From positions 826,646,001-826,710,000 of the forward strand of contig NC_091284.1 in NCBI RefSeq assembly GCF_032444005.1: DNA of 64,000 bases. The letters run 5' to 3'. This stretch comes from Ranitomeya imitator (taxonomy: Eukaryota). Below the pieces are notes generated by a model. It made no database searches. It saw only the letters and a list, made by a program, of their open reading frames with translations, and had not been told where the DNA came from. Made by a program: the position numbers and the translations under genes. Positions 31,450-60,718 of the stretch are shown in pieces; the first letter of the stretch is position 1, and every line of letters begins with the position of its first letter.

Positions 31450-33293
31450 TCTACTGTATAATCGCCTAATTCTGTCTGTTTGTAACGGAAATCCCGCGTC
31501 GCTGATTGGTCGCATCAGCCGCCCATGACCAATCAGCGATATTGGCGTGGAATTTAACCCCACACTCACAGTGCCACGTAGTTCAGTCACGTTTACTGAA
31601 CAAGTTCTGTCAGTCACAGTGCCACGTAGTTCAGTCACGTTTACTGAACAAGTTCTGTCAGTCACAGTGCCACGTAGTTCAGTCACGTTTACTGAACAAG
31701 TTCTGTCAGTCACAGTGCAACGTAGTTCAGTCCCGTTTACTGAACAAGTTCTGTCAGTCACAGTGCCACGTAGTTCAGTCACGTTTACTGAACAAGTTCT
31801 GTCAGTCACAGTGCCATGTAGTTCAGTCCCGTTTACTGAACAAGTTCTGTCAGTCACAGTGTGACATAGTTCACTCACGTTTACTGAACAAGTTCTGTCA
31901 GTCACAGTGTGACATAGTTCACTCACGTTTACTGAACAAGTTCTGTCAGTCACAATGTGACATAGTTCACTCACGTTTACTGAACAAGTTCTGTCAGTCA
32001 CAGTGTGACATAGTTCACTCACGTTTACTGAACAAGTTCTGTCAGTCACAGTGCCACGTAGTTCAGTCCCGTTTACTGAACAAGTTCTGTCAGTCACAGT
32101 GTGACATAGTTCACTCACGTTTACTGAACAAGTTCTGTCACAGTGCCACGTAGTTCAGTCACGCTTACTGATTAAGTTCTGTCAGTCACAGTGTCACATA
32201 GTTCACACACGTTTACTGAACAAGTTCTGTCAGTCACAGTGCCACGTAGGTCAGTCACGCTTACTGATTAAGTTCTGTCAGTCACAGTGTCACATAGTTC
32301 ACACACGTTTACTGAACAAGTTCTGTCAGTCACAGTGCCACGTAGTTCACTCACGTTTACTGAATAAGTTCTGTCAGTCACAGTGCCACGTAGGTCATTA
32401 AAGTTTTCTGAACAAGTTCTGTCGGTCACAGTGCCACGTAGTTTAGTCACGTTTACTGAATAAGTTCTGCCAGTCACAGTGCCACATAATCCACGCACGT
32501 TTACTGAACAAGTTCTGTCAGTCACAGTGCCACATAGTTCACTCACGTTTACTGATTAAGTTCTGTCAGTCACAGTGCCATGTAGTTCAGTCACGTTTAC
32601 TGAGCAAGTTCTGTCAGTCACAGTGCCACGTAGTTCAGTCAAGTTTACTGAACAAGTTCTGTCAGTCACAGCGCCATGTAGTTCAGTCCCGTTTACTGAA
32701 CAAGTTCTGTCAGTCACAGTGCCACATAGTTCACTCACGTTTACTGAACACGTTCTGTCAGTCACAGTGCCACATAGTTCAGTCAAATTTACTGAACAAG
32801 TTCTGTCAGTCACAGTGCCATGTAGTTCAGTCACGTTTACTGAACAAGTTCTGTCAGTCACAGTGCCACGTAGTTCAGTCACATTTACTGAACAAGTTCT
32901 GTCAGTCACAGTGCCACATAGTTCACTCACGTTTACTGAACACGTTCTGTGAGTCACAGTGCCACATAGTTCACGCACGTTTACTGAACAAGTTCTGTCA
33001 GTCACGGTGCCATGTAGTTCAGTCACGTTTACTGAACAAGTTCTGTCAGTCACAGTGCCACATAGTTCACGCATGTTTACTGAACAAGTTCTGTCAGTCA
33101 CAGTGCCACGTAGTTCAGTCATGTTTACTGAACAATTTCTGTCAGTCACAGTGCCACATAGTTCACTCACGTTTACTGAACAAGTTCTGTCAGTCACAGT
33201 GCAATATAGTTCACTCACGTTTACTTTGTAAGTAAACTACATACAGTACATCTTCTAGAATATCCGATGCGTTAGAATCGGGTCACCATCTAG
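31450..33293 (+). mobile_element. Non-autonomous Helitron, copy 1
   Basis: A|TC 5' end, CTAG|T 3' end, hairpin CCGAT...ATCGG (33264-33281) 8 nt before CTAG, no TSD; both ends shared with copy 2 at 57885-60718. Confidence 0.8.
31564..33225. repeat. Minisatellite, 48-bp unit (CAGTCACAGTGCCACGTAGTTCAGTCACGTTTACTGAACAAGTTCTGT) inside Helitron copy 1
   Basis: Periodicity read directly. Confidence 0.95.
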
Positions 33294-34721
33294 TGTAAAA
33301 TAAACAGCAATTTTTTTTACTTTGGTGCAAAAAAAAAGTCACAACAAAATGCATATGATAAATTGGTCACCAATTGTCTGAAGACACATATCGTCCAGGA
33401 GAGTATGAGGAGAATCCCCAGGAAATGGAGACAAAAAATGATCCTGGTGGAGGCACGTCAGCAGAACAATACTGAAGCCATCGAGGGTCAGTAAAGAAAG
33501 TGGCTAGTGGATATAGCAGACGGCCACGAGTCTCCTGTATGGGGTAAAATACGACATTACCCCAGATAAACACTGGCTCTGGAAGCTCCATTCATTGCGA
33601 ATAACGGTGCACTGTAATTTGGCGCCCGTGCACAGGCGACGATTGGGCAGAACGAATATCGGGACTCATAGGTGTCCTGACATTTATAAAGCTTTACGGA
33701 CTCCAGACGATTTTTTTTATTTATTTATTTTTTTTTACAAAAATGCCTTTAAAAAAAAAAGGGAAAAAAACCAAAACCCCTAATAGATGCACCGTGTATC
33801 CATCAGATATTGTCTCCTCGCTGCAGAGGACCCTCACATGAGAGTGATTATGATTAGTGGGGGCCACACGTGGGGGAGTCGGTGACTCAGCACATGAAAT
33901 AATGTCCGCCAGCTGGGGGGCACGACCAATCGGAAGCCTCCTTACAGGAGGTGTGTGCCCCCATCTTCGGGGCCCATTTACATTGGAGCCATAAATATCC
34001 AGATGAGTACAGGACAAGTAAACGCCATGTTGTTTCCGGTGTGACCCATCACTGCCATGATTGATTACCAGTGGGTGTTGAACTAGTGGCCGCCATTGGA
34101 GTGCATAGATGTAGCAAAGTTGAATTTGTCACTTGTGCTACATATATACATTGAGCTCACAATGGTCAGCGTCTATACTGTAGGTCTGTGCTGAAAGCCC
34201 CCCACAGCGGCATGCTGGGAGTTGTAGTTTTTACCACAGCCGGGGACCACAGCGATTGCGTTGGCCTAAAGCTGGCACTAATTAATCATGCGCGGGTTCC
34301 CCTTGTGGTGAGGCATGCTATTACCACAGCAATGGCGGCCATGCAGTAAACAATGGATTCGCATCCACAATTTTGGTGAAAATCGCTGTAAATACATAAT
34401 TACAGTACAGACCAAAAGTTTGGACACACCTCATTTAAAGATTTTTCTGTATTTTCATGACTATGAAAATTCTACATTCACACTGAAGGCATCAAAACTA
34501 TGAATTAACACATGTGGAATTATATACTTAACAAAAAAGTGTGAAACAACTGATATTATGTCTTATATTCTAGGTTCTTCAAAGTAGCCACCTTTTGCTT
34601 TGATGACTGCTTTGCACAATCTTGGCATTCTCTTGATGAGCTTCAAGAAGTAGTCACCGGGAATGGTTTTCACTTCACACGTGTGCCCTGTCAAGTTTAA
34701 TAAGTGGGATTTCTTGCCTTA

Positions 34722-35102
34722 GGGTATGTTTCCACGTGCAGGAAACGCTGCGTGTCTGACGCTGCATAGAGCTGCAGCGTCAGACACGCAGCGTCCAGAT
34801 GTTACAGCATAGTGGAGGGGGTTTAATGCAATCCCGTCTGCACTATGCATGGTAACACGCACGCGGCGGCCCTGCGACTCCGGACATGCTGCGCGTCTTT
34901 TCAGATCGCAGCATGTCAGTATATCTTGCGGCGACGCTGCGTCGCCACAAGATATAGCACAGGGCCCTATGCGATGGGTGCGATGATGCCGGATGTGTGC
35001 TGTGAACGCATCATCGCGTCCCAGAAGGGGGCGGGGCTTACCGCAGAGCGGCAAAGCCGCTCTGACGATACCGCCGGCCATCCTGAAAGTGGACACATAC
35101 CC
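34722..35102. mobile_element. PIF/Harbinger-type MITE (381 bp) nested in the Tc1
   Basis: TIR GGGTATGTTTCCACGTGCAGG vs reverse complement of right end GGGTATGTGTCCACTTTCAGG (18/21); TTA duplicated at 34719-34721 and 35103-35105. Confidence 0.88.
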
Positions 35103-35197
35103 TTATAAATTGGGTTAGGACCATCAGTTGTCTTGTGCAGAAGTCGGGTGGATACACAGCTGATAGTCCTACTGAATAGACTGTTAGAATTTGTATT

Positions 35198-35790
35198 ATG
35201 GCAGGAAAAAAGCAGCTAAGTAAAGAAAAACGAGTGGCCATCATTACTTTAAGAAATGAAGCTCAGTCAGTCAGAAAAATTGGGAAAACTTTGAAAGTGT
35301 CCCCAAGTGCAGTTGCAAAAACCATCAAGCGCTACAAAGAAACTGTCTCACATGAGGACCGCCCCAGGAAAGGAAGACCAAGAGTCACCTCTGCTTCTGA
35401 GGATAAGTTTATCCGAGTCACCAGCCTCAGAAATCGCAGGTTAACAGCAGCTCAGATTAGAGACCAGGTCAATGCCACACAGAGTTCTAGCAGCAGACAC
35501 ATCTCTACAACAACTGTTAAGAGGAGACTTTGTGCAGCAGGCCTTCATGGTAAAATAGCTGCTAGGAAACCACTGCTAAGGACAGGCAAGAAGCAGAAGA
35601 GACTTGTTTGGGCTAAAGAACACAAGGAATGGACATTAGACCAGTGGAAATCTGTGCTTTGGTCCGATGAGTCCAAATTTGAGATCTTTGGTTCCAACCA
35701 CCGTGTCTTTGTGCGACGCAGTAAAGGTGAACGGATGGACTCTACATGCCTGGTTCCCACCGTGAAGCATGGAGGATGAGGTGTGATGGT

Positions 35791-35821
<31 letters not shown>

Positions 35822-36266
35822 GAGGTGCTTTGCTGGTGACACTGTTGGGGATTTATTCAAAATTGAACCAGCATGGCTACCACAGCATCTTGCAGCGGCA
35901 TGCTATTCCATCCGGTTTGCGTATAGTTGGACCATCATTTATTTTTCAACAGGACAATGACCCCAAACCACCTCCAGGCTGTGTAAGGGCTACTTGACCA
36001 AGAAGGAGAGTGATGGGGTGCTACGCCAGATGACCTGGCCTCCACAGTCACCAGACCTGGACCCAATCGAGATGGTTTGGGGTGAGCTGGACCACAGAGT
36101 GAAGGCAAAAGGGCCAACGAGTGCGAAGCATCTCTGGGAACTCCTTCAAGATTGTTGGAAGACCATTCCCGGTGACTACCTCTTGAAGCTCATCAAGAGA
36201 ATGCCAAGAGTGTGCAAAGCAGTAATCAAAGCAAAAGGTGGCTACTTTGGAGAACCTAGAATATAA
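35198..36266 (+). pseudogene. Disrupted Tc1 transposase
   Basis: MAGKKQLSKEKR...WSDESKF...HGG then TGA at 35777-35779; (GT)n/poly-G expansion and frameshifts; QQDNDPK and WPPQSPDLDPIE lie in different frames. Confidence 0.93.
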
Positions 36267-36779
36267 GACATAATTTCAGTTGTTTCACACTTTTTTGTTA
36301 AGTATATAATTCCACATGTGTTAATTCATAGCTTTGATGCCTTCAGTGTGAATTTACAATTTTCATAGACATGAAAATACAGAAAAATCTTTAAATGAGA
36401 AGGTGTGTCCAAACTTTTGGTCTGTACTGTATATATCACCATTGTGGTGAAACTGAGGCAAAACAGCAGCATTTTGACACAATAAACTGCAATTTGACTA
36501 CATAACGTCAATATACCACTATAAAAAACATGTGGCAGCTTTTAATTTAGTTTTTTTTTCCCAGTCAGCTCCCATGGCACCAAAATGGCAGCTAATAACT
36601 GTATCCATGGTGTAAAACAACCATGTATGACGTGGTGTAATTTATGTGTTAATACTACACGATCCCTGCAGGGGACCGCGTGACTCTGCACTGACGCCAT
36701 ACTGGCGCAGCGGCCCGTTCACAGCACAATATTAGGGCCCTCACACGGCAACAAGTAGAGCACGGGAGAAGTCAAGCTC

Positions 36780-36899
36780 TTGCCCATAGCAACCAATCAC
36801 AACACTCCTTTCATTTTGAAAAGGGCTTCTCAGACATGAAACCTTGAATCTGATTGGTTGCCAAGTCAGCTTTATATGGAGTCTTGTTGCTAAGGGCAA
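36780..36899. mobile_element. Small palindromic MITE-like remnant
   Basis: TTGCCCATAGCAAC ... GTTGCTAAGGGCAA inverted pair. Confidence 0.4.
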
Positions 36900-37138
36900 A
36901 CCTTATACAGGAGAGTGGGAAATGTCACCAGACTGGAGTCCACCATATTCCCCCTGTCTCCGCTCTCACTGGTGACCGCCTGGCAGTGCCCATGTGGTAT
37001 TATAACGCCAGCCTGGCACCTATGTATTAATGGGTCAGAAAGACTGCTGTGAGGCAGCGGACCGGTCCGGGACATTGAGCGGGGGACTTCGGCTGATTTT
37101 GCAGTCTACCCTCTCCATTCAATAATGACCGGCCTTCT

Positions 37139-37330
37139 TAAAGGGGTTATCTTAAATTAGAAAAACATGGCTGTCGTCTTTTAAAAACAGCGCCACCCCA
37201 GTCCACAGGATGTCTGTGGAACTGCATTGACAATAATGCAGAGCTGCAGTACCATACACAACCTGTGCTGGGGGGTGGCGCTGTTTTTTCAAAGAGACCA
37301 TTGTTTTTTTTTAATCCTGTTCAACCTCCT
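37139..37330. mobile_element. T2/Kolobok-like palindromic MITE
   Basis: TTAA|AGGGGTT start; internal inverted arms AAAAACAGCGCCACCCC / GGGGTGGCGCTGTTTTT. Confidence 0.55.
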
Positions 37331-37550
37331 GAACTTTTACCGTCTCTCCAACCAATGGCTATTGGGAAACTACAACTCCCAGCATGCCCAGACAGTGACT
37401 GCTCGGAATCCATACATACATACAGTCAAAGACTTCTGGCCGCTCTTAGGAGCCGGGTTATTGGACATTTTGGATGATCCGACGCCCTGCTAGCCCCTCA
37501 CTGGACACCACCTATCTAATAAGATGCGACTTCGCTGTTACAGACACATT

Positions 37551-37556
37551 TTTATT
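37551..37556 (-). terminator. Candidate C2CD3 polyadenylation signal AATAAA (3'UTR ~37530-38159)
   Basis: Plus strand TTTATT ~600 nt past the stop; ATTAAA variant near 37570. Confidence 0.5.
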
Positions 37557-38159
37557 CCAAACTTGTGAAATTTAATAAATTAAGACATAATTTGTGGAGA
37601 AATAAATAATTTATCCATAGAAAATTCCATAAATAGTTATAATACAGGAATGTAAAATATATGTACAAGATGTGCTGAAGGGGGCGCCGGCGAGTGACGC
37701 CATGACGTACAATGCCGAGACCGGACAGACAGGCTCCTATGGTGGTTTTATATATACTTCAGAGCTGCATTCACTATCCTGCAGGCTTCAGAGCTGAAAT
37801 CGTCACTGCTTGCATGTTCAGTGTCCGGTGATTTGATTACTGGGAAGTGTCGACGACGTCACACCGGACACGGTGAAGAGACCCCCCTGCAATATAGGAG
37901 CTCAGATAAGCCGCTAGGTGTGGGGGGTGTCTGTCTTCAAGCATGCTGTTTCTAATAACAACCAGCAGAATTATGAATACAGCTCTGGAGTATAATAGAT
38001 TTTTTTTTTTTTACTCAGCCCTCCAAACAGCTTCACCCCTGGATCCAGATCACTTGCTAGTGGCAGCTCCTGAACTACATGTCCCAGCACACCTAACCAC
38101 TCAATGATCCAGAGGAGTGGAGACCCCGGGTATCCAGGAGGGGTCCAGAGATGTCACCC

Positions 38160-38306
38160 TCATTTCTTATCAGGAAACTGTGCTGCAAAAATCCTGGCGA
38201 TGCGATTCACCTCGGCCTCCGGGAGTTCGGCCCTTGTCATCCTGGGGACTGGGCGATGGCGACGTCGGAAGGGGATTCCTCTAGGGGCCTCAGTGATATC
38301 CTCATC
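38160..38306 (-). CDS. C2CD3: C2CD3 terminal coding exon (DEDITEAPRG...LPEAEVNRIARIFAAQFPDKK*)
   Basis: ctttccctttacag| acceptor, phase 0; resembles the human C-terminus LPEEETLRIARIFSSQ as recalled. Confidence 0.9.
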   Translation of the reverse strand, partial: DEDITEAPRGIPFRRRHRPVPRMTRAELPEAEVNRIARIFAAQFPDKK

Positions 38307-38440
38307 CTGTAAAGGGAAAGGTCAGCGGTCAGTGTGTACAGCACCCTACATCTCACCAAGGACCACCGCAGTACGGCAGAGGGAGAGACAACGAAAAGCG
38401 GAAGAAATGTCCGACAGTGTCACTATCCCACAACACGAAC

Positions 38441-40222
38441 GTCAGCGTTATCCTGTACCCCGAGTGTCGGCGTCATTATCCTGTACCCCGAGTGTCAGCG
38501 TCATTATCCTGTACCACGAGTGTCAGTATCATTATCCTGTACCCCAGTGTCAGTGTCATTATCCTGCACCCCGAGTGTCGGCGTCATTATCCTGTACCCC
38601 GAGTGTCAGCGTCATTATCCTGTACCCCGAGTGTCAGTGTCATTATCCTGTACCCCGAGTGTCAGTGTCATTATCCTGTACCCCAGTGTCAGTGTCATTA
38701 TCCTGTACCCCGAGTGTCGGCGTCATTATCCTGCACCCCGAGTGTCGGCGTCATTATCCTGTACCCCAGTGTCAGTGTCATTATCCTGTACCCCGAGTGT
38801 CAGTGTCATTATCCTGTACCCCAGTGTCAGTGTCATTATCCTGTACCCCGAGTGTCAGTGTCATTATCCTGTACCCCAGTGTCAGTGTCATTATCCTGTA
38901 CCCCGAGTGTAAGCGTCATTATCCTGTACCCCGAGTGTCGGCGTCATTATCCTGTACCCCGAGTGTCGGCGTCATTATCCTGCACCCCGAGTGTCGGTGT
39001 CATTATCCTGTACCCCGAGTGTCGGCGTCATTATCCTGTACCCCGAGTGTCGGCGTCATTATCCTGCACCCCGAGTGTCAGCGTCATTATCCTGTACCCA
39101 GAGTGTCAGTGTCATTATCCTGTACCCCCAGTGTCAGTGTCATTATCCTGTACCCCAGTGTCAGTGTCATTATCCTGTACCCCGAGTGTCGGCGTCATTA
39201 TCCTGTACCCTGAGTGTCGGCGTCATTATCCTGCACCCCGAGTGTCAGCGTCATTATCCTGTACCCCCAGTGTCAGTGTCATTATCCTGTACCCCGAGTG
39301 TCGGCGTCATTATCCTGTACCCCGAGTGTCGGCGTCATTATCCTGTACCCCGAGTGTCATTATCCTGTACCCCGAGTGTCAGCGTCATTATCCTGTACCC
39401 CGAGTGTCAGTGTCATTATCCTGTACCCCCAGTGTCAGTGTCATTATCCTGTACCCCGAGTGTCATTATCCTGTACCCCGAGTGTCGCCGTCATTATCCT
39501 GTACCCCGAGTGTCAGTGTCATCCTGTACCCCGAGTGTCAGTGTCATTATCCTGTACCCCGAGTGTCAGTGTCATTATCCTGTACCCCGAGTGTCAGCGT
39601 CATTATCCTGTACCCCGAGTGTCAGCGTCATTATCCTGTACCCCGAGTGTCAGTGTCATTATCCTGTACCCCCAGTGTCAGTGTCATTATCCTGTACCCC
39701 CAGTGTCAGTGTCATTATCCTGTACCCCGAGTGTCAGTGTCATTATCCTGTACCCCCAGTGTCAGCGTCATTATCCTGTACCCCGAGTGTCAGTGTCATT
39801 ATCCTGTACCCCCAGTGTCAGTGTCATTATCCTGTACCCCCAGTGTCAGTGTCATTATCCTGTACCCCCAGTGTCAGTGTCATTATCCTGTACCCCCAGT
39901 GTCAGTGTCATTATCCTGTACCCCCAGTGTCAGTGTCATTATCCTGTACCCCGAGTGTCAGTGTCATTATCCTGTACCCCGAGTGTCAGTGTCATTATCC
40001 TGTCCCCCGAGTGTCAGTGTCATTATCCTGTACCCCCAGTGTCAGTGTCATTATCCTGTACCCCCAGTGTCAGTGTCATTATCCTGTACCCCCAGTGTCA
40101 GTGTCATTATCCTGTACCCCGAGTGTCAGTGTCATTATCCTGTCCCCCGAGTGTCAGTGTCATTATCCTGTACCCCCAGTGTCAGTGTCATTATCCTGTA
40201 CCCCCAGTGTCAGTGTCATTAT
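38441..40222. repeat. Minisatellite, 27-28-bp unit (CAGTGTCATTATCCTGTACCCCGAGTGT), last C2CD3 intron
   Basis: Periodicity read directly. Confidence 0.96.
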
Positions 40223-40710
40223 GACGCTTCGGGGTGACGAGTGTCTCCGGTCTCGGAGCTCCCTGTGGTGCGGGGGTTAACAGTACAGTCAGCAGCGGCC
40301 ATTGTGCAATGTCCCCGTCGGCGAGGACGCCGCCAAGTTTGCAGCTAATTTCGGAAGCGGCTGATCCCGCTCCGTCAGCCGGACTGAACCGGCTCCAGAT
40401 TATCAGCCGCTGAACCCTGTACACAGTGAGAAGTAGGAAGAGCCGGGGAGATAAGTGACACATGGCAGGTTACTGCATCAGGGTCAAAAACCAGGAGGCT
40501 CAGGATGAGCAGAGCCAGGCGTCACCCCCAGACAGGGAGTACATACAACTATGGGGGACAACCGGCTCTGAGCCCAGAGGAAAGGGTTAATGGCCCATAC
40601 AGGTCTCCTTTATTCGCAGGTTTGTGATACGAGACGCTCCGTGACCCTGACCTGCGGGGTAACGGCCACAGTGCTCCCCACTCCCTACCTGCACAAATAA
40701 AAAAGACGGC

Positions 40711-44519: not shown

Positions 44520-44645
44520 AAGTGTTACAAAATATATAAGAAAAAAAATATATATAAAAATTAAAACAAAAAAATAAAATAAAAAAACCACACGTTTGGT
44601 ATCGCCACATTCAGAATCGCTCGATCAAGAAAAAAAATAATTATA

Positions 44646-44694
<49 letters not shown>

Positions 44695-45248
44695 TATATT
44701 CATCCGATCAGTTACGGCGTAACAAGAAAAAAATCAAAAAATCACAGAATTACTTTTGTCGCTGCAACATTGAAATAAAATACGAGGAGATCAAAAAAAT
44801 CATATCTACCCCAAAATGGTATCAATAAAAACGTCAGCAAAATAAGCCATCGCCCCAGAGCCTGGAAATGGAGACGCTACGGGGCTCGTAAAATAACGAC
44901 AAAACACAAAAACTTTTTTTTCATTCAAATTTTGGAATTTTTTTTTCACCACTTAAAAAAAAAAAAAGAAGCCAGACATGTTTGTTATGTGCGAACTCGC
45001 ACTGACCGGGAGAATCACAATCGCAGGTCCGTTTTAGCAGTGAGTAAATAAAAGTCCGTAAAACAATTGTGAAACTTCAGCGCACTTGGAATTTTTCCCC
45101 GTTTGCTATGTGGTTAAATCAATGGCGTCAATCAAAAGTACAACTCGTCCCCCATCAAGCGATGGGGACGGACAAATAAAAAAGTTATGGCCCCGAGACA
45201 AAGGGGAGCAAATAACGGAAACAAAAGATCGTCTGTGGGTGAAGGGGT
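44520..45248 (-). mobile_element. TTAA piggyBac-like non-autonomous element (reverse orientation)
   Basis: Minus strand begins TTAA|CCCCTTCA and is similar to the element starting at 57105; inner edge approximate. Confidence 0.65.
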
Positions 45249-45250: not shown

Positions 45251-46130
45251 ACCCTTTCCCGATCGGGCGACTTTTCCATCCACATATGAGATTTTGCTTT
45301 TTGCGGCACAAGTTGTACTTTTGAAGGACACAATTCATTTATCATGTGATACACCGGAAAGCGAAATAAAAGCTCAATTCCGCAAGTGTTTTGGGTTTTT
45401 CTTCCTTGTTTATTATACGGTAAAACTGACCTTCCAATATGATTCCCCAGCTCAGTGCGAGTCCACAGATACCAAACGGGTCTAGTTTTGTTTTTTTTTC
45501 TTCTTAAGTGGCACAAACATTTTTTCCCCAAAAAATTTGTAAAAAAAAATTCTGCTTATGTCGCCATTTTTCAAGCCCCGTATTGTTTTCAATTTTTGGT
45601 GGATGGGGCTGTGCGAGGGAATATTTTTTTTGACATCCTGACATTTTTATCGATACCATTTTGGGGTCGATATGATATTTTGATCACTTCTTACTGCATT
45701 TTTTGTTGCTTTGTTGCGGTTGCTGAAAAACCATAAATCTCGAGGTCAGAATATTTGTTTTTTTCTGATTACGGCATTTACTGATCGGGTTACTTAATTT
45801 AATATTTTTATAGATTGGACTTTTACAGACACAGCGATAACAAGTATGTGGATTTTTATTATTTTTTTTCTTTATTTTTAATGCAGGAAAAGGGGGATGC
45901 TTTCAGCTTTTTTTTTCATGTAGTTCTTAAAACTTTTTTTTTTTTTTTTACTGTATTTAATAGTCCCCTTAGGGGACTTGAAGCTGCGATCATCTGATTG
46001 CTCGTGCTGTATCAGCCCTGCTATGTGTTGTGATGACCACGGTCTCCTATGAACGCCGGCTACAGGATGGTAATCACAGGAGGATCGCCATGACAGGCAC
46101 GGGGGTCTTCAGCAGACTGTACATCAGAAG
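45251..46130 (+). mobile_element. Related TTAA piggyBac-like element, head-to-head with the previous one
   Basis: TTAA|CCCTTTCCCG start; shared blocks such as AGTTGTACTTTTGA and GCGATA(A/C)CAA; right edge approximate. Confidence 0.6.
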
Positions 46131-48572: not shown

Positions 48573-48576
48573 GTAC

Positions 48577-49540: not shown

Positions 49541-49769
49541 TTCAGGTAATACGTAAATGAAGCTGAAATATCCCTTTAAAAAAAAGGTTGTCCAAGATCA
49601 AGTGGAAAGAAAAGGGTCTTGCTTTGTTCTTTAGTAACTGTGTGCAGTTTTGCAAATCAAAACCAAAAGCAGCGAGTGGAAAAGAGAAAAACAAGCTGGT
49701 GCAATGGAAAGGAATTCTCGGCCCCCTCCAGTATGGTTCCATCATTACGGCAGGACCCCTCATCCTCAC

Positions 49770-49925
49770 CTGAGTGCAGTCAGCAGAGCGGTGCGTGACG
49801 CCTGCGGCAGAGCGTCCATGTGCTCTGCGCTCCACGTGTTCCTCTCCGCCTGCTGGACTGACTCTTGGAAGCGACGCATGGTCTCCATATCTTCATCATG
49901 TCCTATTGATGGGAATATATTCTCC
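49770..49925 (-). CDS. C2CD3: C2CD3 exon (RENIFPSIGHDEDMETMRRFQESV...TALLTALR)
   Basis: cttgcag|G acceptor, AG|gtgagg donor; 156 nt, phase 2 to 2. Confidence 0.9.
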
Positions 49926-49962
49926 CTGCAAGAGTAAGAAATGAAGAATGTAGGAAACACCG

Positions 49963-52900
49963 GAGCACAATCATACAGAGTACAATCACACCGGGCACAA
50001 TCACACCGGGCACATCACACCGACTACAATCACACCGAGCACATCACACCGAGCACATCACACCGAGTACAATCACGCCGAGTACAATCACGCCGAGTAC
50101 AATCACACCGACTACAATCACACCGAGCACATCACACCGAGCACATCACACCGAGTACAATTACACCGATACACACCAACTACAATCACACAGAGTACAA
50201 TCACACCGAGTACAATCACACCGGGCACAATCACACCGGGCACATCACACCGACTACAATCACACCGAGCACATCACACCGAGCACATCACACCGAGTAC
50301 AATTACACCGATACACACCAACTACAATCACACAGAGTACAATCACACCGACTACAATCACACCGAGCACAATCACACCGAGTACAATCACACAGAGTAC
50401 AATCACACCGGGCACAATCACACCGGGCACATCACACCGACTACAATCACACCGAGCACATCACACCGAGCACATCACACCGAGTACAATTACACCGATA
50501 CACACCAACTACAATCACACAGAGTACAATCACACCGAGCACATCACACCGAGTACAATCACACAGAGCACAATCACACAGAGCACAATCACACCGAGTA
50601 CAATCACACCGAGCACAATCACACCGAGTACAATCACACCGACTACAATAACACCGAGCACATCACACCGAGTACAATCACACCGAGTACAATCACACCG
50701 ACTACAATCACACAGAGTACAATCACACAGAGTACATCACACCGAGCACATCAGAGTACAATCACACCGAGTACAATCACACCGACTACAATCACACCGA
50801 GCACAATCACACCGAGTACAATCACACCGACTACAATAACACCGAGCACATCACACCGAGTACAATCACACCGAGTACAATCACACCGACTACAATCACA
50901 CAGAGTACAATCACACAGAGTACATCACACCGAGCACATCACACAGAGTACAATCACACCGAGTACAATCACACCGACTACAATCACACCGAGCACAATC
51001 ACACCGACTACAATCACACCGACTACAATCACACCGAGTACAATCACACCGAGTACAATCACACAGAGCACATCACACAGAGTACAATCACACAGAGTAC
51101 AATCACACAGAGTATATCACACAGAGTATATCACACAGAGCACATCACACAGAGTACAATCACACCGAGTACAATCACACCGACTACAATCACACAGAGT
51201 ACAATCACACAGAGCACATCACACCGAGCACATCACACAGAGCACATCACACCGAGCACATCACACTGGGCACATCACACAGAGCACATCACACAGAGTA
51301 CATCACACAGAGTACAATCACACAGAGTACATCACACAGAGCACATCACACAGAGCACATCACACAGAGTACATCACACAGAGTACATCACACTGGAGTA
51401 CATCACACTGGGCACATCACACAGAGTACATCACACAGAGTACATCACACTGGGCACATCACACAGAGTACATCACACAGAGTACATCACACAGAGTACA
51501 TCACACAGAGTACATCACACAGAGTACATCACACAGAGTACATCACACAGAGCACATCACACAGAGTACATCACACAGAGCACATCACACAGAGTACATC
51601 ACACAGAGTACATCACACAGAGTACATCACACTGGAGTACATCACACAGAGTACATCACACAGAGTACATCACACAGAGTACATCACACAGAGCACATCA
51701 CACAGAGCACATCACACAGAGTACATCACACAGAGCACATCACACAGAGTACATCACACAGAGTACAATCACACAGAGTACATCACACAGAGTACATCAC
51801 ACTGGGCACATCACACAGAGTACATCACACAGAGTACATCACACAGAGTACATCACACAGAGCACATCACACAGAGCACATCACACAGAGTACATCACAC
51901 AGAGCACATCACACAGAGCACATCACACAGAGTACATCACACAGAGTACAATCACACAGAGTACATCACACAGAGTACATCACACTGGGCACATCACACA
52001 GAGTACATCACACAGAGTACATCACACAGAGTACATCACACAGAGTACATCACACAGAGTACATCACACAGAGTACATCACACAGAGCACATCACACAGA
52101 GTACATCACACAGAGCACATCACACAGAGTACATCACACAGAGTACAATCACACAGAGCACATCACACAGAGTACATCACACAGAGTACATCACACAGAG
52201 TACATCACACAGAGTACATCACACAGAGTACATCACACAGAGTACATCACACTGGGCACATCACACAGAGTACATCACACAGAGTACATCACACTGAGTA
52301 CATCACACAGAGCACATCACACTGAGTACATCACACAGAGTACATCACACAGAGTACAATCACACAGAGTACATCACACAGAGCACATCACACAGAGTAC
52401 ATCACACAGAGTACATCACACAGAGTACATCACACTGAGTACATCACACAGAGTACATCACACAGAGTACAATCACACAGAGTACATCACACAGAGCACA
52501 TCACACAGAGTACATCACACAGAGTACATCACACAGAGTACATCACACAGAGTACATCACACTGGAGTACATCACACTGGGCACATCACACAGAGTACAT
52601 CACACAGAGTACATCACACAGAGTACATCACACAGAGTACATCACACTGGGCACATCACACAGAGTACATCACACAGAGTACATCACACAGAGTACATCA
52701 CACAGAGTACATCACACAGAGTACAATCACACAGAGTACATCACACTGAGTACATCACACTGAGTACATCACACTGGGCACATCACACTGAGTACATCAC
52801 ACTGGGCACATCACACTGAGTACATCACACTGGGCACATCACACAGAGTACATCACACAGAGTACATCACACTGGGCACATCACACTGGGCACATCACAC

Positions 52901-53204
52901 TGAGTACATCACACTGAGTACATCACACAGAGTACATCACACTGGGCACATCACACTGGGCACATCACACTGGGCACATCACACAGAGTACATCACACAG
53001 AGTACATCACACTGGGCACATCACACTGGGCACATCACACAGAGTACATCACACTGGGCACATCACACTGGGCACATCACACTGGGCACATCACACAGAG
53101 TACATCACACAGAGTACATCACACTGGGCACATCACACTGAGTACATCACACTGGGCACATCACACTGGGCACATTACACAGAGTACATCACACAGAGTA
53201 CATC
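49963..53204. repeat. Minisatellite, 14-15-bp units (ACAATCACACCGAGT / ACATCACACAGAGT / ACATCACACTGGGC)
   Basis: Periodicity read directly. Confidence 0.96.
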
Positions 53205-53277
53205 CTGCTCGCTTTGTCCGGATGCTTCACCTCTTATTCCATCTTGAGACCTGCATGTGATGGTGCAGTCATCTTAC

Positions 53278-53396
53278 CTATTACTGGCTTGGCACGGCAC
53301 GTCGGCGAGGTCTGCAGGAGGGGGCGCAGGGTACGCGGTGACCGGACCACACAGAGCCGGACTGGAGTGATAAAGAGAAGACGGATGTGACAAGAC
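53278..53396 (-). CDS. C2CD3: C2CD3 exon (VLSHPSSLYHSSPALCGPVTAYPAPPPADLADVPCQASN)
   Basis: Strong cgttttccag| and AG|gtaaga sites; 119 nt, phase 0 to 2 fits both neighbours; little recognisable sequence conservation. Confidence 0.78.
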
Positions 53397-53684
53397 CTGG
53401 AAAACGAAAATGAGACTATATTAAGTAAAGTGGCGCAGGCTGAACTATTCCAGGGGGTATACACTGCTCCCTTGCAATCACCACCATTTATATCTGAAGC
53501 TGGAAATGTCGTTGCAGGGCCCTATAACCATCAGCGGCCCGTAGGATGCTGGTATTTGTGTGCGGGCAGAGAACGTATTTGGACCAGGGGGCACATCCGT
53601 TCAGCCGACCCCTGCTCCATACAGTCTCACTACACAGCATCACCACCTACTTTCTTAGTAAACCTTTATAGGGGCATTACCCAC

Positions 53685-53890
53685 CTCAGGACATCTGGGT
53701 GAGGCTTCGTTCCTCAGCCTTCTCTCCTCCTTCAGATGCGAGATGTTTTCCAGAGGGGTGATGGACACTTTGATCTGGCCTTGGCAATGACCCGTGAAAT
53801 CGCCGATATTGTACCATCCGCACACGGACTGAAAGCCGGAAAGTAAAGGAGAGAGATCCACAGAGGCGAAGCCCAGGACTCGTTCCACAT
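53685..53890 (-). CDS. C2CD3: C2CD3 C2-domain exon ([48 protein letters not shown]...CPE)
   Basis: Highly conserved peptide; cttgcag|AT acceptor, GAG|gtgggt donor; 206 nt. Confidence 0.95.
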
Positions 53891-54453
53891 CTGCAAGACA
53901 TCAGAGAAAGGATTGATACCGTGAAGATTGGAGCAAACTGTGCAGTATGTTCACTTTCTCCACGTCAGGCGGGAGACTGCAAAAGGAGCGGGCAGAGCGA
54001 GGATAATCTGCACTGTGCAGCAGGATGGCATCGCTGGTAATGACCAAATGACCCGTCCACCTGCGGGGGTGCATGTGCATACACTAAAGGGGGTTACCGG
54101 CAAATGTAGGTAATCGGCAGGATAGAGCCGCCGGGACACCGAGGCTGGATGGATGGATACCGGTGCAAAACCCTGTAAGTAGTGCGCGCTTCATTGTATC
54201 GGAAACCGGCTACTCTGTCCCAGCAGTGGTGACCGGTAACCGAGGCAATCAGTGGCATGTAACAGGATCTGCAGGACCCATCCATTCTAGAGAACGGGGA
54301 GGATTTTTAATAAGTAAATTGCAAAGTTGCTTCTTTGTTGTTTTACAAGAAACTTTGCAAATGTTACCCAATTAATAAGATGAGAGGGTTAATAATGGTG
54401 CGGCTTTAAAAGCCCGGACAACCCCAGTCCTTGCTCCGTCATCAGTAACTTAC

Positions 54454-54521
54454 CGGCAGCTTTGTGCCACACCTTGAACACTAAGGTTTGTTGAGGGTCG
54501 ACAAGAAGCTCATTGCTCAAC
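54454..54521 (-). CDS. C2CD3: C2CD3 exon (LSNELLVDPQQTLVFKVWHKAA)
   Basis: ctgtag|G acceptor, G|gtaagt donor; 68 nt; not in the ORF track. Confidence 0.93.
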
Positions 54522-54923
54522 CTACAGACACGGAGAATAAGAAAGAAAAACGATGAGTCGGCGAGTCAGTCCAGGGCGCAGGAGTCTTGTCATTTCTGGT
54601 CCCATACAGGCCGTCGGGCGCAGCCGATACCTAGTTTCTATTCTTTCCATATGAATGCGGTTATTCTGCAGCAGGTGATTAGATTTCTGCAAACTCCTTT
54701 CAAATCATTGGGATTTTTGCAGAAATGTCTAATGTGAATCCACTAAATACAAATCTATAGGTTACTCCGTCGATGTCCAATAAGGGGCCACAGCGCCTGG
54801 TCGGGGGCGACAGGAGTAGCAGCAAATTATCCAATGCAAAAACTTTGGGTTAAAAGCGTTCTACATCCATCTGGGGACATTGATGACACATTTCTGACTT
54901 GTTAAAGGTTTTTTGGAACATAC

Positions 54924-55062
54924 CTGACTTGGTGCTGGAAATTCCAGGTTGGGGAGTCTGTACGGTCAATGATTGGGGTAGTTATGGGGGTTGTAGTACC
55001 AGCGACGGGGAAGGACACGGAACAACTAGGGACGGCCACGGCTCTCTCGGTCAGAGGACTGC
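54924..55062 (-). CDS. C2CD3: C2CD3 exon (GSPLTERAVAVPSCSVSFPVAG...TDSPTWNFQHQVR)
   Basis: ttgcag|GC acceptor, AG|gtatgt donor; 139 nt; 68-nt upstream intron. Confidence 0.93.
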
Positions 55063-55130
55063 CTGCAATGACCCGCTGATTAGTACGATTTCACATCTCC
55101 TGGATTTCAGTCCAAGCATCTAATCTGTAC

Positions 55131-55457
55131 CTTTTAAGCTGAGATGCATCGCGCGCTCCACCAGAACATTCACAGAGAACGTGGCTTCCAGCTCCGCGGC
55201 CGCCGGCTCACCGCCGAGACTCGGAGATTTATCACTTTGCTCTTTCTGGGCCGACTTCTTGTGACTGTCTGGCTTCTCGTCCGTATATTCCTGGGAGACT
55301 TCTCGCACCTCGTAATCCTCGGGAAAGCTCTCGTCCTCCGGAGAACTGGGGCATCGGGCGCTTGATGACGGATGATAGGCAGAGCTCAGGCACAGGTGAA
55401 CCCTCACCGCTGCGCCCCACAGATTGGGTGCATTGTGCTTAAAAAGGGGATAAACAC
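55131..55457 (-). CDS. C2CD3: C2CD3 exon (GVYPLFKHNAPNLWGAAVRVHL...TFSVNVLVERAMHLSLK)
   Basis: tttcag|GT acceptor, G|gtacag donor; 327 nt, phase 1 to 1. Confidence 0.93.
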
Positions 55458-55747
55458 CTGAAATATTAGAAGAATCTGAATTAAAGGGGCTGGAGGACAA
55501 GTAGGGTCAGCGCCTTATGCGGTTTAGTGGCCGTTCTCATGAAGAGATTGTGATCGGAGCTGCAGTATCAGCCACTAGACGGTGTACAAAGGTGCCACGT
55601 TCAAGCCGCTCCGGACCCCGATTAATCTGAGGATGATGACCTGCCAACAATATCTAAGTCCTGGACGACGGCTTTCCAGGATTTCTACGTTGATGGGTTA
55701 GGATCGTTGCATTTATTATGGGGGGGCAGCAATGGTCGTTCACCTAC

Positions 55748-56344
55748 CACTAACAGAGAGGGTCCGGGAGGTGTCTTCTGACAGGGCGGTAAGGTCCACG
55801 TAGGCACACCCAAGCAGACGGTCAGTGTCTTGAGGTCTCGGCCCGCTGGTGTCCTTCCCGTAGGAACGCCAGATCTGGATTTCCAGCTTCTCTTCCCGGA
55901 GATACCACACGAGCGGCTGATGCTTCGTCAGCTCCACAGTCCTCGTTTGCTCAAACCCCACCGTGGCCCGTTGGCCGTCCTCGGATACAGATGGCCTTCT
56001 TAACGGCGAGCAGACGGCGTCTTTATCGTACAGCTTGTACCTCAGGTAGCAGTAGGTGCTCTTGTGGAGGCGCTTGTGACCGGCCAGCAGGAGGCAGTGC
56101 AGCGGGAGCCAGATCTTGGGGATAGTAACAGAGAGATTGACCAGTTCGTCATCGCCAGCTGAATCGCCACCCTCATCCTCCGTCCATCCCAGGCCTCGGG
56201 CCGCCTCCAGGACACGTTCTCTGTCAGCGTGATGAGCAAAGCGAACACAAAGCTCCAGGCCGCCGACAACAGCGTCCAACACCCCCGCCGAACTGGGAAG
56301 TGTGGGGTCTTCAGAGACCATTACTGGGAACCAGCCGGAAATTC
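55748..56344 (-). CDS. C2CD3: C2CD3 C2-domain exon (GISGWFPV...GGLEL...YCYLRYKLYD...LREEKLEIQIWR...RTLSVS)
   Basis: cttctag|GA acceptor, G|gtaggt donor; 597 nt, phase 1 to 1. Confidence 0.95.
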
Positions 56345-56548
56345 CTAGAAGAGGACACAGAAGTGTAAGGCGGTCATTACCCAGATCATCAGAGGAGCTG
56401 TCCTCCTCCTACGGGACCGCTGCAGACACCTTTGGGTGTCAGGGCTCAAAATGAGATGTAAAAACCCTAACCCGCGGGTTAGGTCTACAAAGAAACCTGT
56501 ATAGACGTAGATCTGGAATAGTCGCAGTAATACTCAACCACAGGTCAC

Positions 56549-56635
56549 CTGATCTCTTGGTCAGCAGCTCTCTGGTCGGGATCCTCACCACTCCCAGCAG
56601 ATGGTCGCGCGCCGGCTGAGCTCTGCTTGCACCAG
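56549..56635 (-). CDS. C2CD3: C2CD3 exon (AGASRAQPARDHLLGVVRIPTRELLTKRS); earlier exons lie right of the window
   Basis: ttcttgcag|CT acceptor, G|gtgacc donor; 87 nt; LLGVV.IPT.ELL.KRSG motif. Confidence 0.9.
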
Positions 56636-57884
56636 CTGCAAGAAAAAAAAAACGTTCATTAATATCTTCATGTGCAAAATCCTCCGGGCAACATGTATAA
56701 CTGGAGCTTCTATCAGAGAGCGCAGCTGCAGTGCAAAGTATGGGAAGGGGTATGTGCCTTTAATAACGGCAACGACCGATCACTGCTGTTAACCCTTTAC
56801 AGTCTGAGAGGCCAGGAAAACTCGCAGCAGAACGTCCGCGTCTGCCTCTAGCTCGCTCCATCCTCCTCCATAGACCTTAAAGAACAGCGAGGTGACAGTC
56901 TGGATTCGCTGACGGAGCATTTTAGACTGCGATTTTAGTAGCTAGATACTGATCAAACGATCGCAGGGTCAATTCCCCCACAGGAACGTAAAAAAATAAA
57001 AGATATATATATAAAAAAAAAAAAATTCCTGTGTCACGCCAAAGACGCGCCCGGAAACATTAAATATATTTGTTAAATCGATGAATCCGTAAAAGTCCGG
57101 TCATTTAACCCCTTCATGACCCGGGGTATTTTCGTTTTAGTTTTTCGCTCCCCTTCTTCCCAGATCCATAACTTTTTTATTTTTCCGTCACTATGGCCGT
57201 GTGAGGGCTTGTTTTTTCGCGTGACGAGTTGCACTTTTGAACGACACCATTGGTTTTAACATATCTTTTACTGGAAAACAGGAAAAAAAATCCAAGTGCG
57301 GTGAAATTGTAAAAAAGTGCAGTCCCACACATGATTTTTGTTTGGCTTTTTTGCTAGGTTCACTAAATGCTAACACTGACCTGCCATTATGATTCTCCAG
57401 GTCATTACGAGTTCATAGACACCAAACATGTCTACGTTATTTTTTATCTAAGTGGTGAAAAAAAATTCCAAACTTTGCTAAAAAAAAAATAAAAATAAAA
57501 AATTTCGCCATTTTCCGATACCCATAGCGTCTCCATTTTTCGTGATCTCAGGTCGGGTGAGGGCTTATTTTTTGCGCCAAGCTGAAGTTTTTAATTATAC
57601 CATTTTGGTGCAGATACGTTCTTTTGATCACCCGTTATTGCATTTTAATGCAATGTCACGGCGACCAAACAAAAGTAATTCTGGTGTTTTGAATTTTTTT
57701 CTCGCTTTGCCGTTTAGTAATCAGGTTAATCCTTTTTTTCGGGTGATTCTGAACGCAGCGATACCAAATATGTGTATGTTTGATTTTTTTTTTAATTGTT
57801 TTATTTTGAATGAGGCAAAAGGGGGGTGATTTCATCTTTTAGATTTTTTTTTTATATTTTTATAAACATTTTTTTTTTCTGCCA

Positions 57885-60718
57885 TCTATATATATTTGTC
57901 TAAGGTACACTTCCGTCTGTTTGTCTGTAACGGAAATCCCGCGTCACTGATTGGTTGCGGCCGGCGGTCCGCGACCAATCAGTGACGGGCACAGTTCGGC
58001 CGCAAATTCGCCCCTCCCTACTCCCCTCCAGTCAGTGCCCCCATAGCGGTTTAGCAGTCCGCTAACGCTGCTATTAACCCTGAGTGACCAACTTTTTTAC
58101 TATTGATGCTGCCTATGCAGCATCAATAGTAAAAAGATTTAATGTTAAAAATAATAAAAAAAAGAAAAAATCATTATGTTCTCACCTTCCGGCGCCTTTC
58201 CCACTCCTCGCGACGCTCCGGTCCCAAGAATGCATTGCGGCAATGACAGGAGATGACGTAGCGGGCTTGCGAGATGATGACATAACGGTCTCGCGAGACC
58301 GCTACATCAGCAGGGGTTATTGCCGCAATACATTCTTGGGACCGGAGCGTCCGGGAAAGGCCTGGGCTGGATCCGGGGGCCGCGGGAAGGTGGGTATATA
58401 ACTATTTATTTTAATTCTTTTTTTTAACAGGGATATGGTGCCCACACTGCTGTATACTAAGTGGGCTGTGCTATATACTACGTGGGCTGTGTTATATACT
58501 GCATGGGCTGTGTTATATACTACGTGGGCTGTGCAATATACTACGTGGGCTGTGCAATATACTACGTGGGCTGTGCTATATACTACGTGGGCTGTGCTAT
58601 ATACTACGTGGGCTGTGATATATACTACGTGGGCTGTGCTACATACTACTTGGGCTGTGCTACATACTACTTGGGCTGTGTTATATACTACTTGGGCTGT
58701 GTTATAAACTGCGTGAGCTGAGTTATAAACTGCGTGAGCTGTGTTATAAACTGCGTGGCCTGTGTTATACAATGCGTCTCTACTATATACTATGTGGGCT
58801 GTGCTATAAACTATGTGGCTGTTATATACTGCGTGGCCCGTGTTATATACTGCGTGGCCCGTGTTATATACTGCGTGGCCCGTGTTATATACTGCGTGGC
58901 CCGTGTTATATACTGCGTCTCTGCTATATACTACGTGGGCTGTGCTATATACTACGTGGCTGTGTTATATACTACGTGGGCTGTGTTATATACTGCATGG
59001 CCTGTGTTATATACTACGTCTCTGTGCTATATACTACGTGGCTGTGTTATATACTGCGTGTCCTGTGTTATATACTGGGTGGCCTGTGTTATATACTACG
59101 TCTCTACTATATACTATGTGGGCTGTGCTATAAACTATGTGGCTGTTATATACTGCGTGGCCCGTGTTATATACTGCGTGGCCCGTGTTATATACTGCGT
59201 GGCCCGTGTTATATACTGCGTGGCCCGTGTTATATACTACGTCTCTGTGCTATATACTACGTGGCTGTGTTATATACTGCGTGTCCTGTGTTATATACTG
59301 GGTGGCCTGTGTTATATACTACGTCTCTGCTATATACTATGTGGGCTGTGCTATATACTATGTGGGCTGTGTTATATACTACATGAGCTGAGTTATAAAC
59401 TGCGTGAGCTGTGTTGAAAACTGCGTGGCCCATGTTATATACTGCGTCTCTGCTATATACTACGTGGGCTGTGCTATATACTACGTGGCTGTGTTATATA
59501 CTACGTGGGCTGTGTTATATACTGCATGGCCTGTGTTATATACTATGTCTCTGTGCTATATACTACGTGGCTGTGTTATATACTGCGTGTCCTGTGTTAT
59601 ATACTGGGTGGCCTGTGTTATATACTACGTCTCTGCTATATACTATGTGGGCTGTGCTATATACTATGTGGCTGTTATATACTATGTGGGCTGTGTTATA
59701 TACTACATGAGCTGAGTTATAAACTGCGTGAGCTGTGTTGAGAACTGCGTGTCCTGTGTTATATACTGGGTGGCCTGTGTTATATACTACGTCTCTGCTA
59801 TATACTATGTGGGCTGTGTTATATACTACATGAGCTGAGTTATAAACTGCGTGGCCTGTGTTATATAATGCGTCTCTACTATATACTACGTGGCTGTGCT
59901 ATATACTGCATGGGCTGTGTTATATACTATGTCTCTGTGCTATATACTACGTGGGCTGGTATATACTACGTGGCTGTGCTATATACTACGTGGCTGTGTT
60001 ATATACTGCATGGGCTGTGTTATATACAACGTGGGCTGTGTTATATACTACGTGGCTGTGTTATATACTACGTGGCTGTGCTACAAACTACATGGCTATG
60101 CAATATACTGCATGGCTGGGCAATATACTACGTGCCCTGTGCTATATACTACGTGGCTGTGCTATATACTACGTGGGCTGTGTTACATACGACGTGGGTT
60201 GTTATATACTACGTGGCCTGTGTTATATACTACGTGGCCTGTGTTATATACTACGTGGCCTGTGTTATATACTACGTGGCTGGGCAATATACTACGTGCC
60301 CTGTGCTATATACTACGTGGCCTGTGTTATATACTACGTGGGCAGTGTTATATACTGCGTGGGCTGTGCTATATACTACATGGGCTGTGTTATATGCTAT
60401 GTGGCTGTGCTATATACTACGTAGCCTGTGTTATATACTACGTGGGCAGTGTTATATGCTATGTGGCTGTGCTATATACTACGTGACCTGTGTTATATAC
60501 TACATGGGCTGTGTTATATGCTATGTGGCTGTGCTATATACTACGTGGCCTGTGTTATATACTACGCGGGCTGTGTTATATGCTAGGTGGCTGTGCTATA
60601 TACTACGTGGCCTGTGTTATATACTACGTGGGCAGTGTTATATACTGCGTGGGCTGTGCTATAGACTACTATACATATTCTAGAATACCAGATGCGTTAA
60701 AATCGGGCCACCATCTAG
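57885..60718 (+). mobile_element. Non-autonomous Helitron, copy 2
   Basis: A|TCTATATATA 5' end; TTCTAGAATACCAGATGCGTTAAAATCGGGCCACCATCTAG|T 3' end; same subterminal motifs as copy 1; no TSD. Confidence 0.82.
58446..60662. repeat. Minisatellite, ~20-21-bp unit (CTGTGCTATATACTACGTGGG) inside Helitron copy 2
   Basis: Periodicity read directly. Confidence 0.95.

What the first reader, a model, noticed from the sequence alone, without database searches (positions are those of the whole stretch)
31450..60718. Two same-family Helitrons carrying completely different minisatellite cargoes
Seen: 31450-33293 and 57885-60718 share A|TC starts, the block GTCTGT...GTAACGGAAATCCCGCGTC, and a ~42-bp 3' end ending CTAG|T. 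One encloses a 48-bp array and the other a 21-bp array, with no evident similarity between the units. The 5' subterminal hairpins show a compensatory change: TCGCTGATTGGTC/GACCAATCAGCGA (31499-31539) versus GTCACTGATTGGT/ACCAATCAGTGAC (57943-57986). Established: these termini are Helitron hallmarks and Helitrons can host tandem repeats. Inference: a Helitron family acting as a minisatellite nursery or vector with a variable slot just before the 3' end and a structurally maintained hairpin; it could explain part of this genome's repeat load.
Basis: partly seen in the sequence, partly recalled or inferred. Interest (0 to 1): 0.7.

Follow-up and report, generated by a model that had tools for sequence, protein, structure and literature searches.

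The report
Two minisatellite-filled frog Helitrons
Two small non-coding rolling-circle transposons (Helitrons) of one family in a frog genome are each stuffed with a different short tandem repeat, which is real but is a pattern already described for such elements in oysters, flies, Xenopus and zebrafish.

Summary
Elements e1 (31450-33293) and e2 (57885-60718) share about 70 bases at the 5' end and about 60 at the 3' end. Both start A|TC and end CTAG|T, and they are the only two copies in the window. e1 holds a 48-bp array and e2 a 21-bp array, with no significant similarity between the units.

e2 is a proven insertion without target duplication. An uninterrupted copy of its host repeat lies in the window, and contigs of four frog samples join the two flanks.

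Contigs also suggest three further points:
- Many other copies end at the same CTAG.
- The 21-bp array is joined to this 3' end in dozens of sequence contexts.
- The array is abundant in two samples only, while the 5' end occurs in all four.

So a vector role is plausible for e2.

The claimed compensatory hairpin change is one CpG-decay pair and carries little weight. The arms are also CCAAT-box-like. Only 2 of the window's 12 arrays lie in these shells, and two others abut LINE tails.

Related shells with unrelated repeats are published for oyster Helentron elements and Drosophila DINE-1. This scan has noted satellite-filled Helitrons in at least five other windows of this genome. It is a new member of a known kind.

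The parts
31450..33293 (+). e1: non-autonomous Helitron, 1844 bp, A|TC...CTAG|T
   Evidence: The ends are homologous to e2 and the flanks are unrelated.
31450..31565 (+). e1 5' shell (left terminal sequence) including the palindrome
31499..31539 (+). e1 5' subterminal palindrome with a 13-bp stem; the arms contain inverted CCAAT boxes
   Evidence: -17 kcal/mol, z -4.6.
31566..33225 (+). e1 cargo: 48-bp minisatellite, 34.7 units, about 90% matches; each unit holds a 7-bp inverted repeat
33233..33293 (+). e1 3' shell: weak hairpin CCGAT..ATCGG lying 11-12 nt before CTAG
57885..60718 (+). e2: non-autonomous Helitron, 2834 bp, inserted A|T in a high-copy host repeat without target duplication
   Evidence: uninterrupted paralogue at 45860-46040; joint across the element in 4 runs; host-repeat loose ends ending ..GGCA before 60719.
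57943..57986 (+). e2 5' subterminal palindrome, a 44-nt near-perfect inverted repeat
   Evidence: -24.5 kcal/mol, z -6.1. One search shows that most family copies have G at 57946 and G at 57968.
57987..58452 (+). e2-specific unique interior, including the palindromes 58094-58135 and about 58181-58372
   Evidence: Depth shows that 58226-58467 is rare in organisms D and H.
58453..60669 (+). e2 cargo: 21-bp minisatellite, about 108 units, 82% matches, with a 300-bp block duplicated at lag 529 (58820-59119 and 59349-59648, 93%)
60662..60718 (+). e2 3' shell ending CTAG; the hairpin is broken by a C-to-A change
   Evidence: In one search, 310 contigs of X1 run on from here into varied AT-rich DNA.
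45860..46040 (+). Uninterrupted paralogue of the e2 host repeat (a paralogous empty site)

Best explanation
e1 and e2 are two non-autonomous canonical Helitrons, rolling-circle 'peel-and-paste' DNA transposons, of one family but different subfamilies.

They keep only what a Rep/helicase supplied in trans needs. That is a 5' end of about 70-140 bp starting TC, with a long subterminal palindrome, and a 3' end of about 55-60 bp ending CTAG. The interior is under no constraint. In each lineage it has been taken over by a different minisatellite.

Shown here:
- homology of the ends;
- insertion at A|T without target duplication (e2);
- a multi-copy 3' terminus;
- unrelated arrays;
- later growth of the e2 array by block duplication.

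Inferred:
- The 21-bp array was acquired after the family arose, in the lineage of organisms A and B.
- It was then spread by transposition of the array-bearing subfamily.
- Both arrays kept growing in place by unequal exchange or slippage.

How each array first arose (from the element's own sequence or from filler DNA) is not resolved.
For: - Ends. The last 30 nt are 27/30 identical.
- Insertion without duplication: the in-window paralogue aligns straight across the site. Joint 57877->60719 is seen in all 4 runs. Loose ends before 60719 have the consensus ...ACTTTTGGCA, which is the host repeat ending in A.
- Multi-copy terminus: 310 contigs of X1 match up to 60719 and then run on into unlike, AT-rich letters with agreement 0.4.
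- Array joined to the 3' shell in many contexts: joints from array units to 60670-60674 in 40 contigs of X1 and 10 of X3.
- Lineage pattern: the bin 57863-57983 has depth in all four organisms. The array bins are huge in A and B and near zero in D and H. The e2-type A at 57946 makes up 33-49% in A and B and 5-7% in D and H.
- In-place growth: 300-bp block duplicated at 93%.
- No coding capacity for Rep/helicase in the window.
- Precedent: PMC7492417 and PMC12001565.
Against: - The canonical 3' hairpin is weak in e1 and disrupted in e2.
- No empty site is available for e1. Its 5' end rests on homology that is only marginally significant.
- No autonomous partner was seen.
- The array-to-3'-end joints have short sides (20-27 nt). 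Contig depth is no copy number, so multiplication of the array-bearing form is suggested, not proven.
- Only one element could be laid on reads.
Confidence: 0.8

Rival explanations
1. The Helitron is a passive substrate. This genome expands minisatellites almost anywhere. The two arrays arose and grew in place after each insertion, so the Helitron neither breeds nor carries them.
For: - 59% of the window is minisatellite, in 12 unrelated arrays.
- Only 2 arrays lie in these shells.
- Two others abut L2-type LINE 3' tails.
- The e2 array shows in-place block duplication.
- No array unit is found elsewhere in the window.
Against: - Dozens of distinct contigs join 21-bp units to the Helitron 3' shell.
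- Abundance of the array goes with abundance of the e2-type variant at 57946 in organisms A and B.
- Earlier notes of this scan report several other satellite-filled Helitrons in this genome (unchecked leads).
Confidence: 0.3
2. The arrays were captured ready-made from genomic minisatellites. Capture would be by filler-DNA repair or template switching during rolling-circle transposition, not by birth from Helitron sequence.
For: - Neither unit resembles any retained shell sequence (all p > 0.5; p about 0.3-0.5).
- The genome is full of potential donor arrays.
- The filler model is favoured for insect Helitrons and discussed for Cg_HINE (PMC7492417).
Against: - No donor array with these units is in the window.
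- Array edges grade into degenerate units, as in-place arrays do.
- The ancestral interior may simply have been overwritten.
Confidence: 0.35
3. The conserved 5' palindrome is kept as a pair of inverted CCAAT boxes (NF-Y-type sites, a promoter-like module carried by the family). It is not kept as a DNA hairpin needed for transposition.
For: - The arms read GACCAATCAG(C/T)GA. From established knowledge of NF-Y sites (RRCCAATSR), this is a close match.
- The e1 loop has diverged while the arms are kept.
- A similar inverted CCAAT pair stands in a CpG-rich stretch at about 23929-23966.
Against: - With the family-majority G at 57968, the palindrome runs almost perfectly through its centre over 44 nt. 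That fits a structural palindrome better than two separate sites.
- No binding or expression data exist.
Confidence: 0.3
4. The elements are not Helitrons. The shared ends belong to another repeat or to a local duplication.
For: - Weak or absent 3' hairpin.
- Only two copies in the window.
Against: - TC and CTAG ends, an A|T target, no duplication, unrelated flanks, and a multi-copy terminus with AT-rich flanks.
Confidence: 0.04

Closest known systems
Cg_HINE_3 and Cg_HINE_6 (group 2) of the Pacific oyster, non-autonomous Helentrons (PMC7492417)
   Same: Related flanking modules enclose completely unrelated tandem repeats. The authors read this as independent incorporation events into shells of common origin. 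There is no target duplication, and the elements are often inserted in other repeats.
   Different: Those are Helentrons: oligo-T targets, subterminal inverted repeats, 140-180-bp monomers and mostly fewer than 5 units. Here the ends are canonical (TC..CTAG, A|T), the units are 21 and 48 bp, and there are 35-108 units.
DINE-1 / DINE-TR1 of Drosophila (as cited in PMC7492417)
   Same: A non-autonomous Helitron-type shell with central tandem repeats that differ between lineages and can seed satellites.
   Different: Helentron-type ends; insects; repeats of about 150 bp.
Heli2Xen / Helitron-N2_XT of Xenopus and Helitron-N1_DR of zebrafish (PMC12001565)
   Same: Vertebrate, including frog, non-autonomous Helitrons made up largely of minisatellite.
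   Different: Helitron2 group with a 166-bp unit, and one repeat type per family.
Heli1Xen1 of Xenopus (PMC12001565)
   Same: Canonical TC..CTAG ends with a TA-rich start in a frog; non-autonomous copies dominate.
   Different: It has a clear 3' hairpin CCCGTTA..TAACGGG and captures gene fragments. It is not described as minisatellite-filled.

Membership tests
Canonical Helitron (Helitron1 type) | 5' end starts TC | tested here: met
   e1 at 31450 and e2 at 57885. Homology between the two begins at this TC.
Canonical Helitron (Helitron1 type) | 3' end CTRR | tested here: met
   CTAG at 33290-33293 and 60715-60718. Other copies' contigs diverge right after it.
Canonical Helitron (Helitron1 type) | Insertion between A and T without target site duplication | tested here: met
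   For e2: the paralogous uninterrupted host repeat and the contig consensus ..GGCA|TGCTTCAAT. For e1: A|..|T is present, but no empty site is available. The nearby TAAAATA on both sides is offset by 2 nt and is not a duplication.
Canonical Helitron (Helitron1 type) | GC-rich hairpin about 10-12 nt before the 3' end | tested here: inconclusive
   e1 has a 5-bp stem CCGAT/ATCGG 11-12 nt from the end, at -4.1 kcal/mol, no better than shuffles. In e2 the stem is broken by C to A.
Canonical Helitron (Helitron1 type) | Dispersed multi-copy family with unrelated flanks | tested here: met
   Two copies in the window have unrelated flanks. 310 contigs in X1 run on from the 3' end into varied AT-rich DNA. 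The 5' end was not shown separately.
Canonical Helitron (Helitron1 type) | An autonomous partner encoding Rep/helicase with matching ends | not testable with these tools
   None in the window. The genome itself cannot be searched here, and two metagenome scans found nothing.
Same Helitron family (rule recalled from Yang and Bennetzen 2009: last 30 nt at least 80% identical) | 3' 30 nt at least 80% identical | tested here: met
   27/30 identical.
Same Helitron subfamily (same rule: first 30 nt at least 80% identical) | 5' 30 nt at least 80% identical | tested here: not met
   15/20 over the first 20 nt, then an 8-10-nt indel. The two are different subfamilies.
Helentron / HINE (DINE-1-like) | Insertion in TT or oligo-T, with subterminal inverted repeats at both ends | tested here: not met
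   The target is A|T. No inverted repeat links the 5' and 3' shells.

The most novel reading that the evidence does not exclude
This canonical Helitron family may be a main engine of the frog's very high minisatellite load. It would repeatedly swap its interior for new arrays and seed them across the genome. Its long 5' palindrome would be a required recognition structure for the transposase, which would be unusual because canonical Helitrons are known for a 3' hairpin, not a 5' one.
Probability: 0.12. Interest if true: 0.55.

Novelty: new member of a known kind. Interest (0 to 1): 0.25.

Why it matters
It adds a vertebrate, canonical-Helitron example to a pattern known mainly from Helentron-type elements: one shell carrying interchangeable tandem repeats. 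Poison-frog genomes are very large and repeat-rich. If array-bearing Helitrons multiply, they are one route by which short arrays get scattered and later grow. In this window, however, they account for only a tenth of the array DNA. The practical value is mostly for annotation: such arrays should be masked together with their shells and counted as transposon copies.

Tried and rejected
- **Unit similarity.** The two units share a 9-mer, CCACGTAGT, on opposite strands. This is not significant after shuffling (p about 0.045 among 66 pairs).
- **Units derived from the shells.** No signal; all p > 0.5.
- **e1 array as an expansion of the e2 segment that follows the shared 5' block (58029-58066).** Score 21 against a null of 20.9; rejected.
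- **A third, diverged copy or other Helitron-like 3' ends next to the other ten arrays.** None found by pattern search, hairpin+CTRR scan, blastn or nhmmer. The AAAATCGGG..ATCTAA at about 4580 is a chance look-alike.
- **A shared structural property of the units.** The e1 unit folds mildly (z -2.1). The e2 unit does not fold.
- **More copies from public collections.** Two metagenome scans with the 5' and 3' blocks found nothing, as expected for frog DNA.
- **Rfam.** No match in the window.
- **Earlier notes searched by sequence.** Blank, which means nothing.
- **A 7-bp TAAAATA on both sides of e1 as a target duplication.** Rejected, because the TG after CTAG belongs to the host in e2.
- **Partner letter at 57983.** The frequency of this partner of 57946 could not be read from the truncated table.
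Full report
**The observation**

- The 19-mer GTAACGGAAATCCCGCGTC occurs exactly twice in the window, at 31482 and 57927, with none expected by chance.
- The 41-nt 3' end occurs twice, at 33253-33293 and 60678-60718.
- The palindrome CTGATTGGT..ACCAATCAG occurs twice.
- Local alignment gives a solid 5' block (e1 31471-31539 with e2 57916-57985, about 81-83%) and a 3' block (e1 33233-33296 with e2 60662-60721, about 87%).
- The first 20 nt after the TC also align, 15/20, shuffle p about 0.05. The DNA just outside does not align. Homology therefore starts at the TC and stops after CTAG.
- nhmmer profiles of both ends, blastn and a generic hairpin+CTRR scan find no third copy and no other Helitron-like 3' end in the window.

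**The arrays**

TRF gives 48 bp x 34.7 at 31566-33225 and 21 bp x 108 at 58453-60669.
- The units share a 9-mer on opposite strands. Their similarity is no better than expected among the 66 pairwise comparisons of the window's 12 array units.
- Neither unit resembles any retained shell sequence.
- I tested whether the e1 unit derives from the e2 segment that follows the shared 5' block. It does not beat controls.
- The e2 array contains a 300-bp block duplicated 529 bp away at 93% identity. Part of its growth was therefore by larger-scale unequal exchange.
- The e1 array is a smooth 48-bp ladder.

**Are they Helitrons?**

e2 sits inside a high-copy host repeat, and an uninterrupted paralogue of that repeat lies in the same window (45452-46001). 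Joining the e2 flanks reproduces the paralogue without duplicated or missing letters.

I laid Logan contigs of four runs from four coded organisms on 57500-61100 at 80% likeness. This gave three results:
- A joint across the element (57877 to 60719) appears in all four runs.
- Loose ends before 60719 have the consensus ...ACTTTTGGCA. This is the host repeat ending in A, directly before the T that follows CTAG.
- In X1, 310 contigs match up to 60719 and then run on into varied AT-rich letters (agreement 0.4). That is what other copies of a Helitron ending at the same CTAG would give.

So the TC start, the CTAG end, the A|T target, the lack of target duplication and the multi-copy 3' terminus are all met. 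The 3' hairpin is the weak point. In e1 it is a 5-bp stem at the right distance but folds no better than shuffles, and in e2 it is broken by a C-to-A change. No Rep/helicase is encoded in the window. The only protein-family matches found there were a reverse transcriptase, a Tc1-type HTH and a mitochondrial-carrier exon.

By the 30-nt rule for Helitron families, recalled from Yang and Bennetzen 2009, the two are one family (27/30 at the 3' end) but different subfamilies.

**Vector or bystander?**

Contig depth is no copy number, but the pattern is informative.
- The 5' shell bin has depth in all four organisms.
- The 21-bp array bins are enormous in organisms A and B and near zero in D and H.
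- At 57946 the e2-type A makes up 33% and 49% of the depth in A and B. It makes up only 5-7% in D and H, where the e1-type G (a CpG) dominates.
- Forty contigs in X1 and ten in X3 join 21-bp units of various registers to the 3' shell at 60670-60674.

Together this suggests an old family shared by related frogs. The subfamily with A at 57946 would have acquired the 21-bp array in the A/B lineage and then multiplied. The joints have short sides (20-27 nt), so I rate this as suggestive.

**The hairpin**

Both 5' palindromes fold strongly as single-stranded DNA. With the family-majority G at 57968 (90-99% in all runs), the e2 palindrome would be nearly perfect over 44 nt.

The claimed compensatory change is real, but it carries little weight:
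- It is a CpG-to-CpA change in one arm and a CpG-to-TpG change in the other. These are the commonest vertebrate mutations.
- Once both CpGs have decayed, two of the four possible outcomes still pair.
- The change is subfamily-wide and so probably one event.
- A second CpG transition in the stem (57956) is left as a T·G mismatch.

The arms also read as inverted CCAAT boxes (GACCAATCAG), so conservation could reflect protein binding. I could not obtain further copies to test covariation.

**Context**

The window is 59% minisatellite, in 12 unrelated arrays.
- Only these two arrays, 10% of the array bases, lie in Helitron shells.
- The arrays at 22807-23668 and 61494-62322 abut L2-type LINE 3' tails.
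- Minisatellite growth is therefore a general habit of this genome, not a Helitron speciality.
- Earlier notes of this scan call the genome a poison frog's and report satellite-filled Helitrons in at least five other windows. I did not check those notes.

**Comparison with what is known**

- In the Pacific oyster, the Helentron elements Cg_HINE_3 and Cg_HINE_6 have related flanks and 'completely unrelated' tandem repeats. The authors interpret this as independent incorporation into shells of common origin. They cite the same for Drosophila DINE-1 (PMC7492417).
- In Xenopus, non-autonomous Heli2Xen/Helitron-N2_XT and zebrafish Helitron-N1_DR are largely minisatellite (PMC12001565).

The present pair differs in three ways. 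It is a canonical A|T, TC..CTAG family. Its units are very short and its arrays long. It also carries a long 5' palindrome.

**Verdict**

The nursery/vector idea is plausible for e2 but already known in kind. The hairpin-covariation claim is weak. This is a new member of a known kind, of modest interest.

Noticed in passing
window 1-64000: 59% of the window is minisatellite, in 12 arrays with unrelated units of 14-48 bp. One of them is 13 kb long (4624-17832).
   Followed up: partly
window 61494-62400 and 62724-63860: The 33-bp array directly abuts the (TTA)n and TGTAAAGCG..GGCGCTATA 3' tail of a minus-strand L2-type LINE. That LINE's reverse-transcriptase ORF lies at 62724-63860. The 41-bp array at 22807-23668 likewise precedes such a tail motif at about 23737-23768.
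   Followed up: partly
window 57400-57884 plus 60719-60770; 45452-46001(+); 44541-45007(-); 19402-19722: e2 is nested in a very high-copy repeat with a T-rich stretch, present in all four frog samples. Two more copies form an inverted pair at 44.5-46.0 kb.
   Followed up: partly
window 58094-58135 and 58181-58372: The e2 interior holds two palindromes. One is a perfect 19-bp-stem palindrome (z -10). The other is a roughly 190-nt imperfect palindrome (z -12.8). It is followed by a donor-like GGTGGGT and an acceptor-like T-run plus AG, as if a scrap of a captured gene start.
   Followed up: no
window about 23929-23966: Another inverted CCAAT pair (GTGATTGGCT..AGCCAATCAGC) lies in a CpG-rich, promoter-like stretch just upstream of the 41-bp array at 24101-29892. 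It is not homologous to the Helitron palindrome by nhmmer.
   Followed up: partly
window 3451-3861(-) and 35198-35779(+): A mitochondrial-carrier exon (UCP-like, which would fit a UCP-C2CD3 neighbourhood) and a Tc1/mariner transposase HTH remnant.
   Followed up: no
window 59315-59435 and 59557-59677: These two bins of the e2 array, which hold variant units with GAGCTGAGTTATAAACTGCGTGAGCTG, have high contig depth in organisms D and H. The rest of the array is nearly absent there. A related repeat may exist in those species.
   Followed up: no
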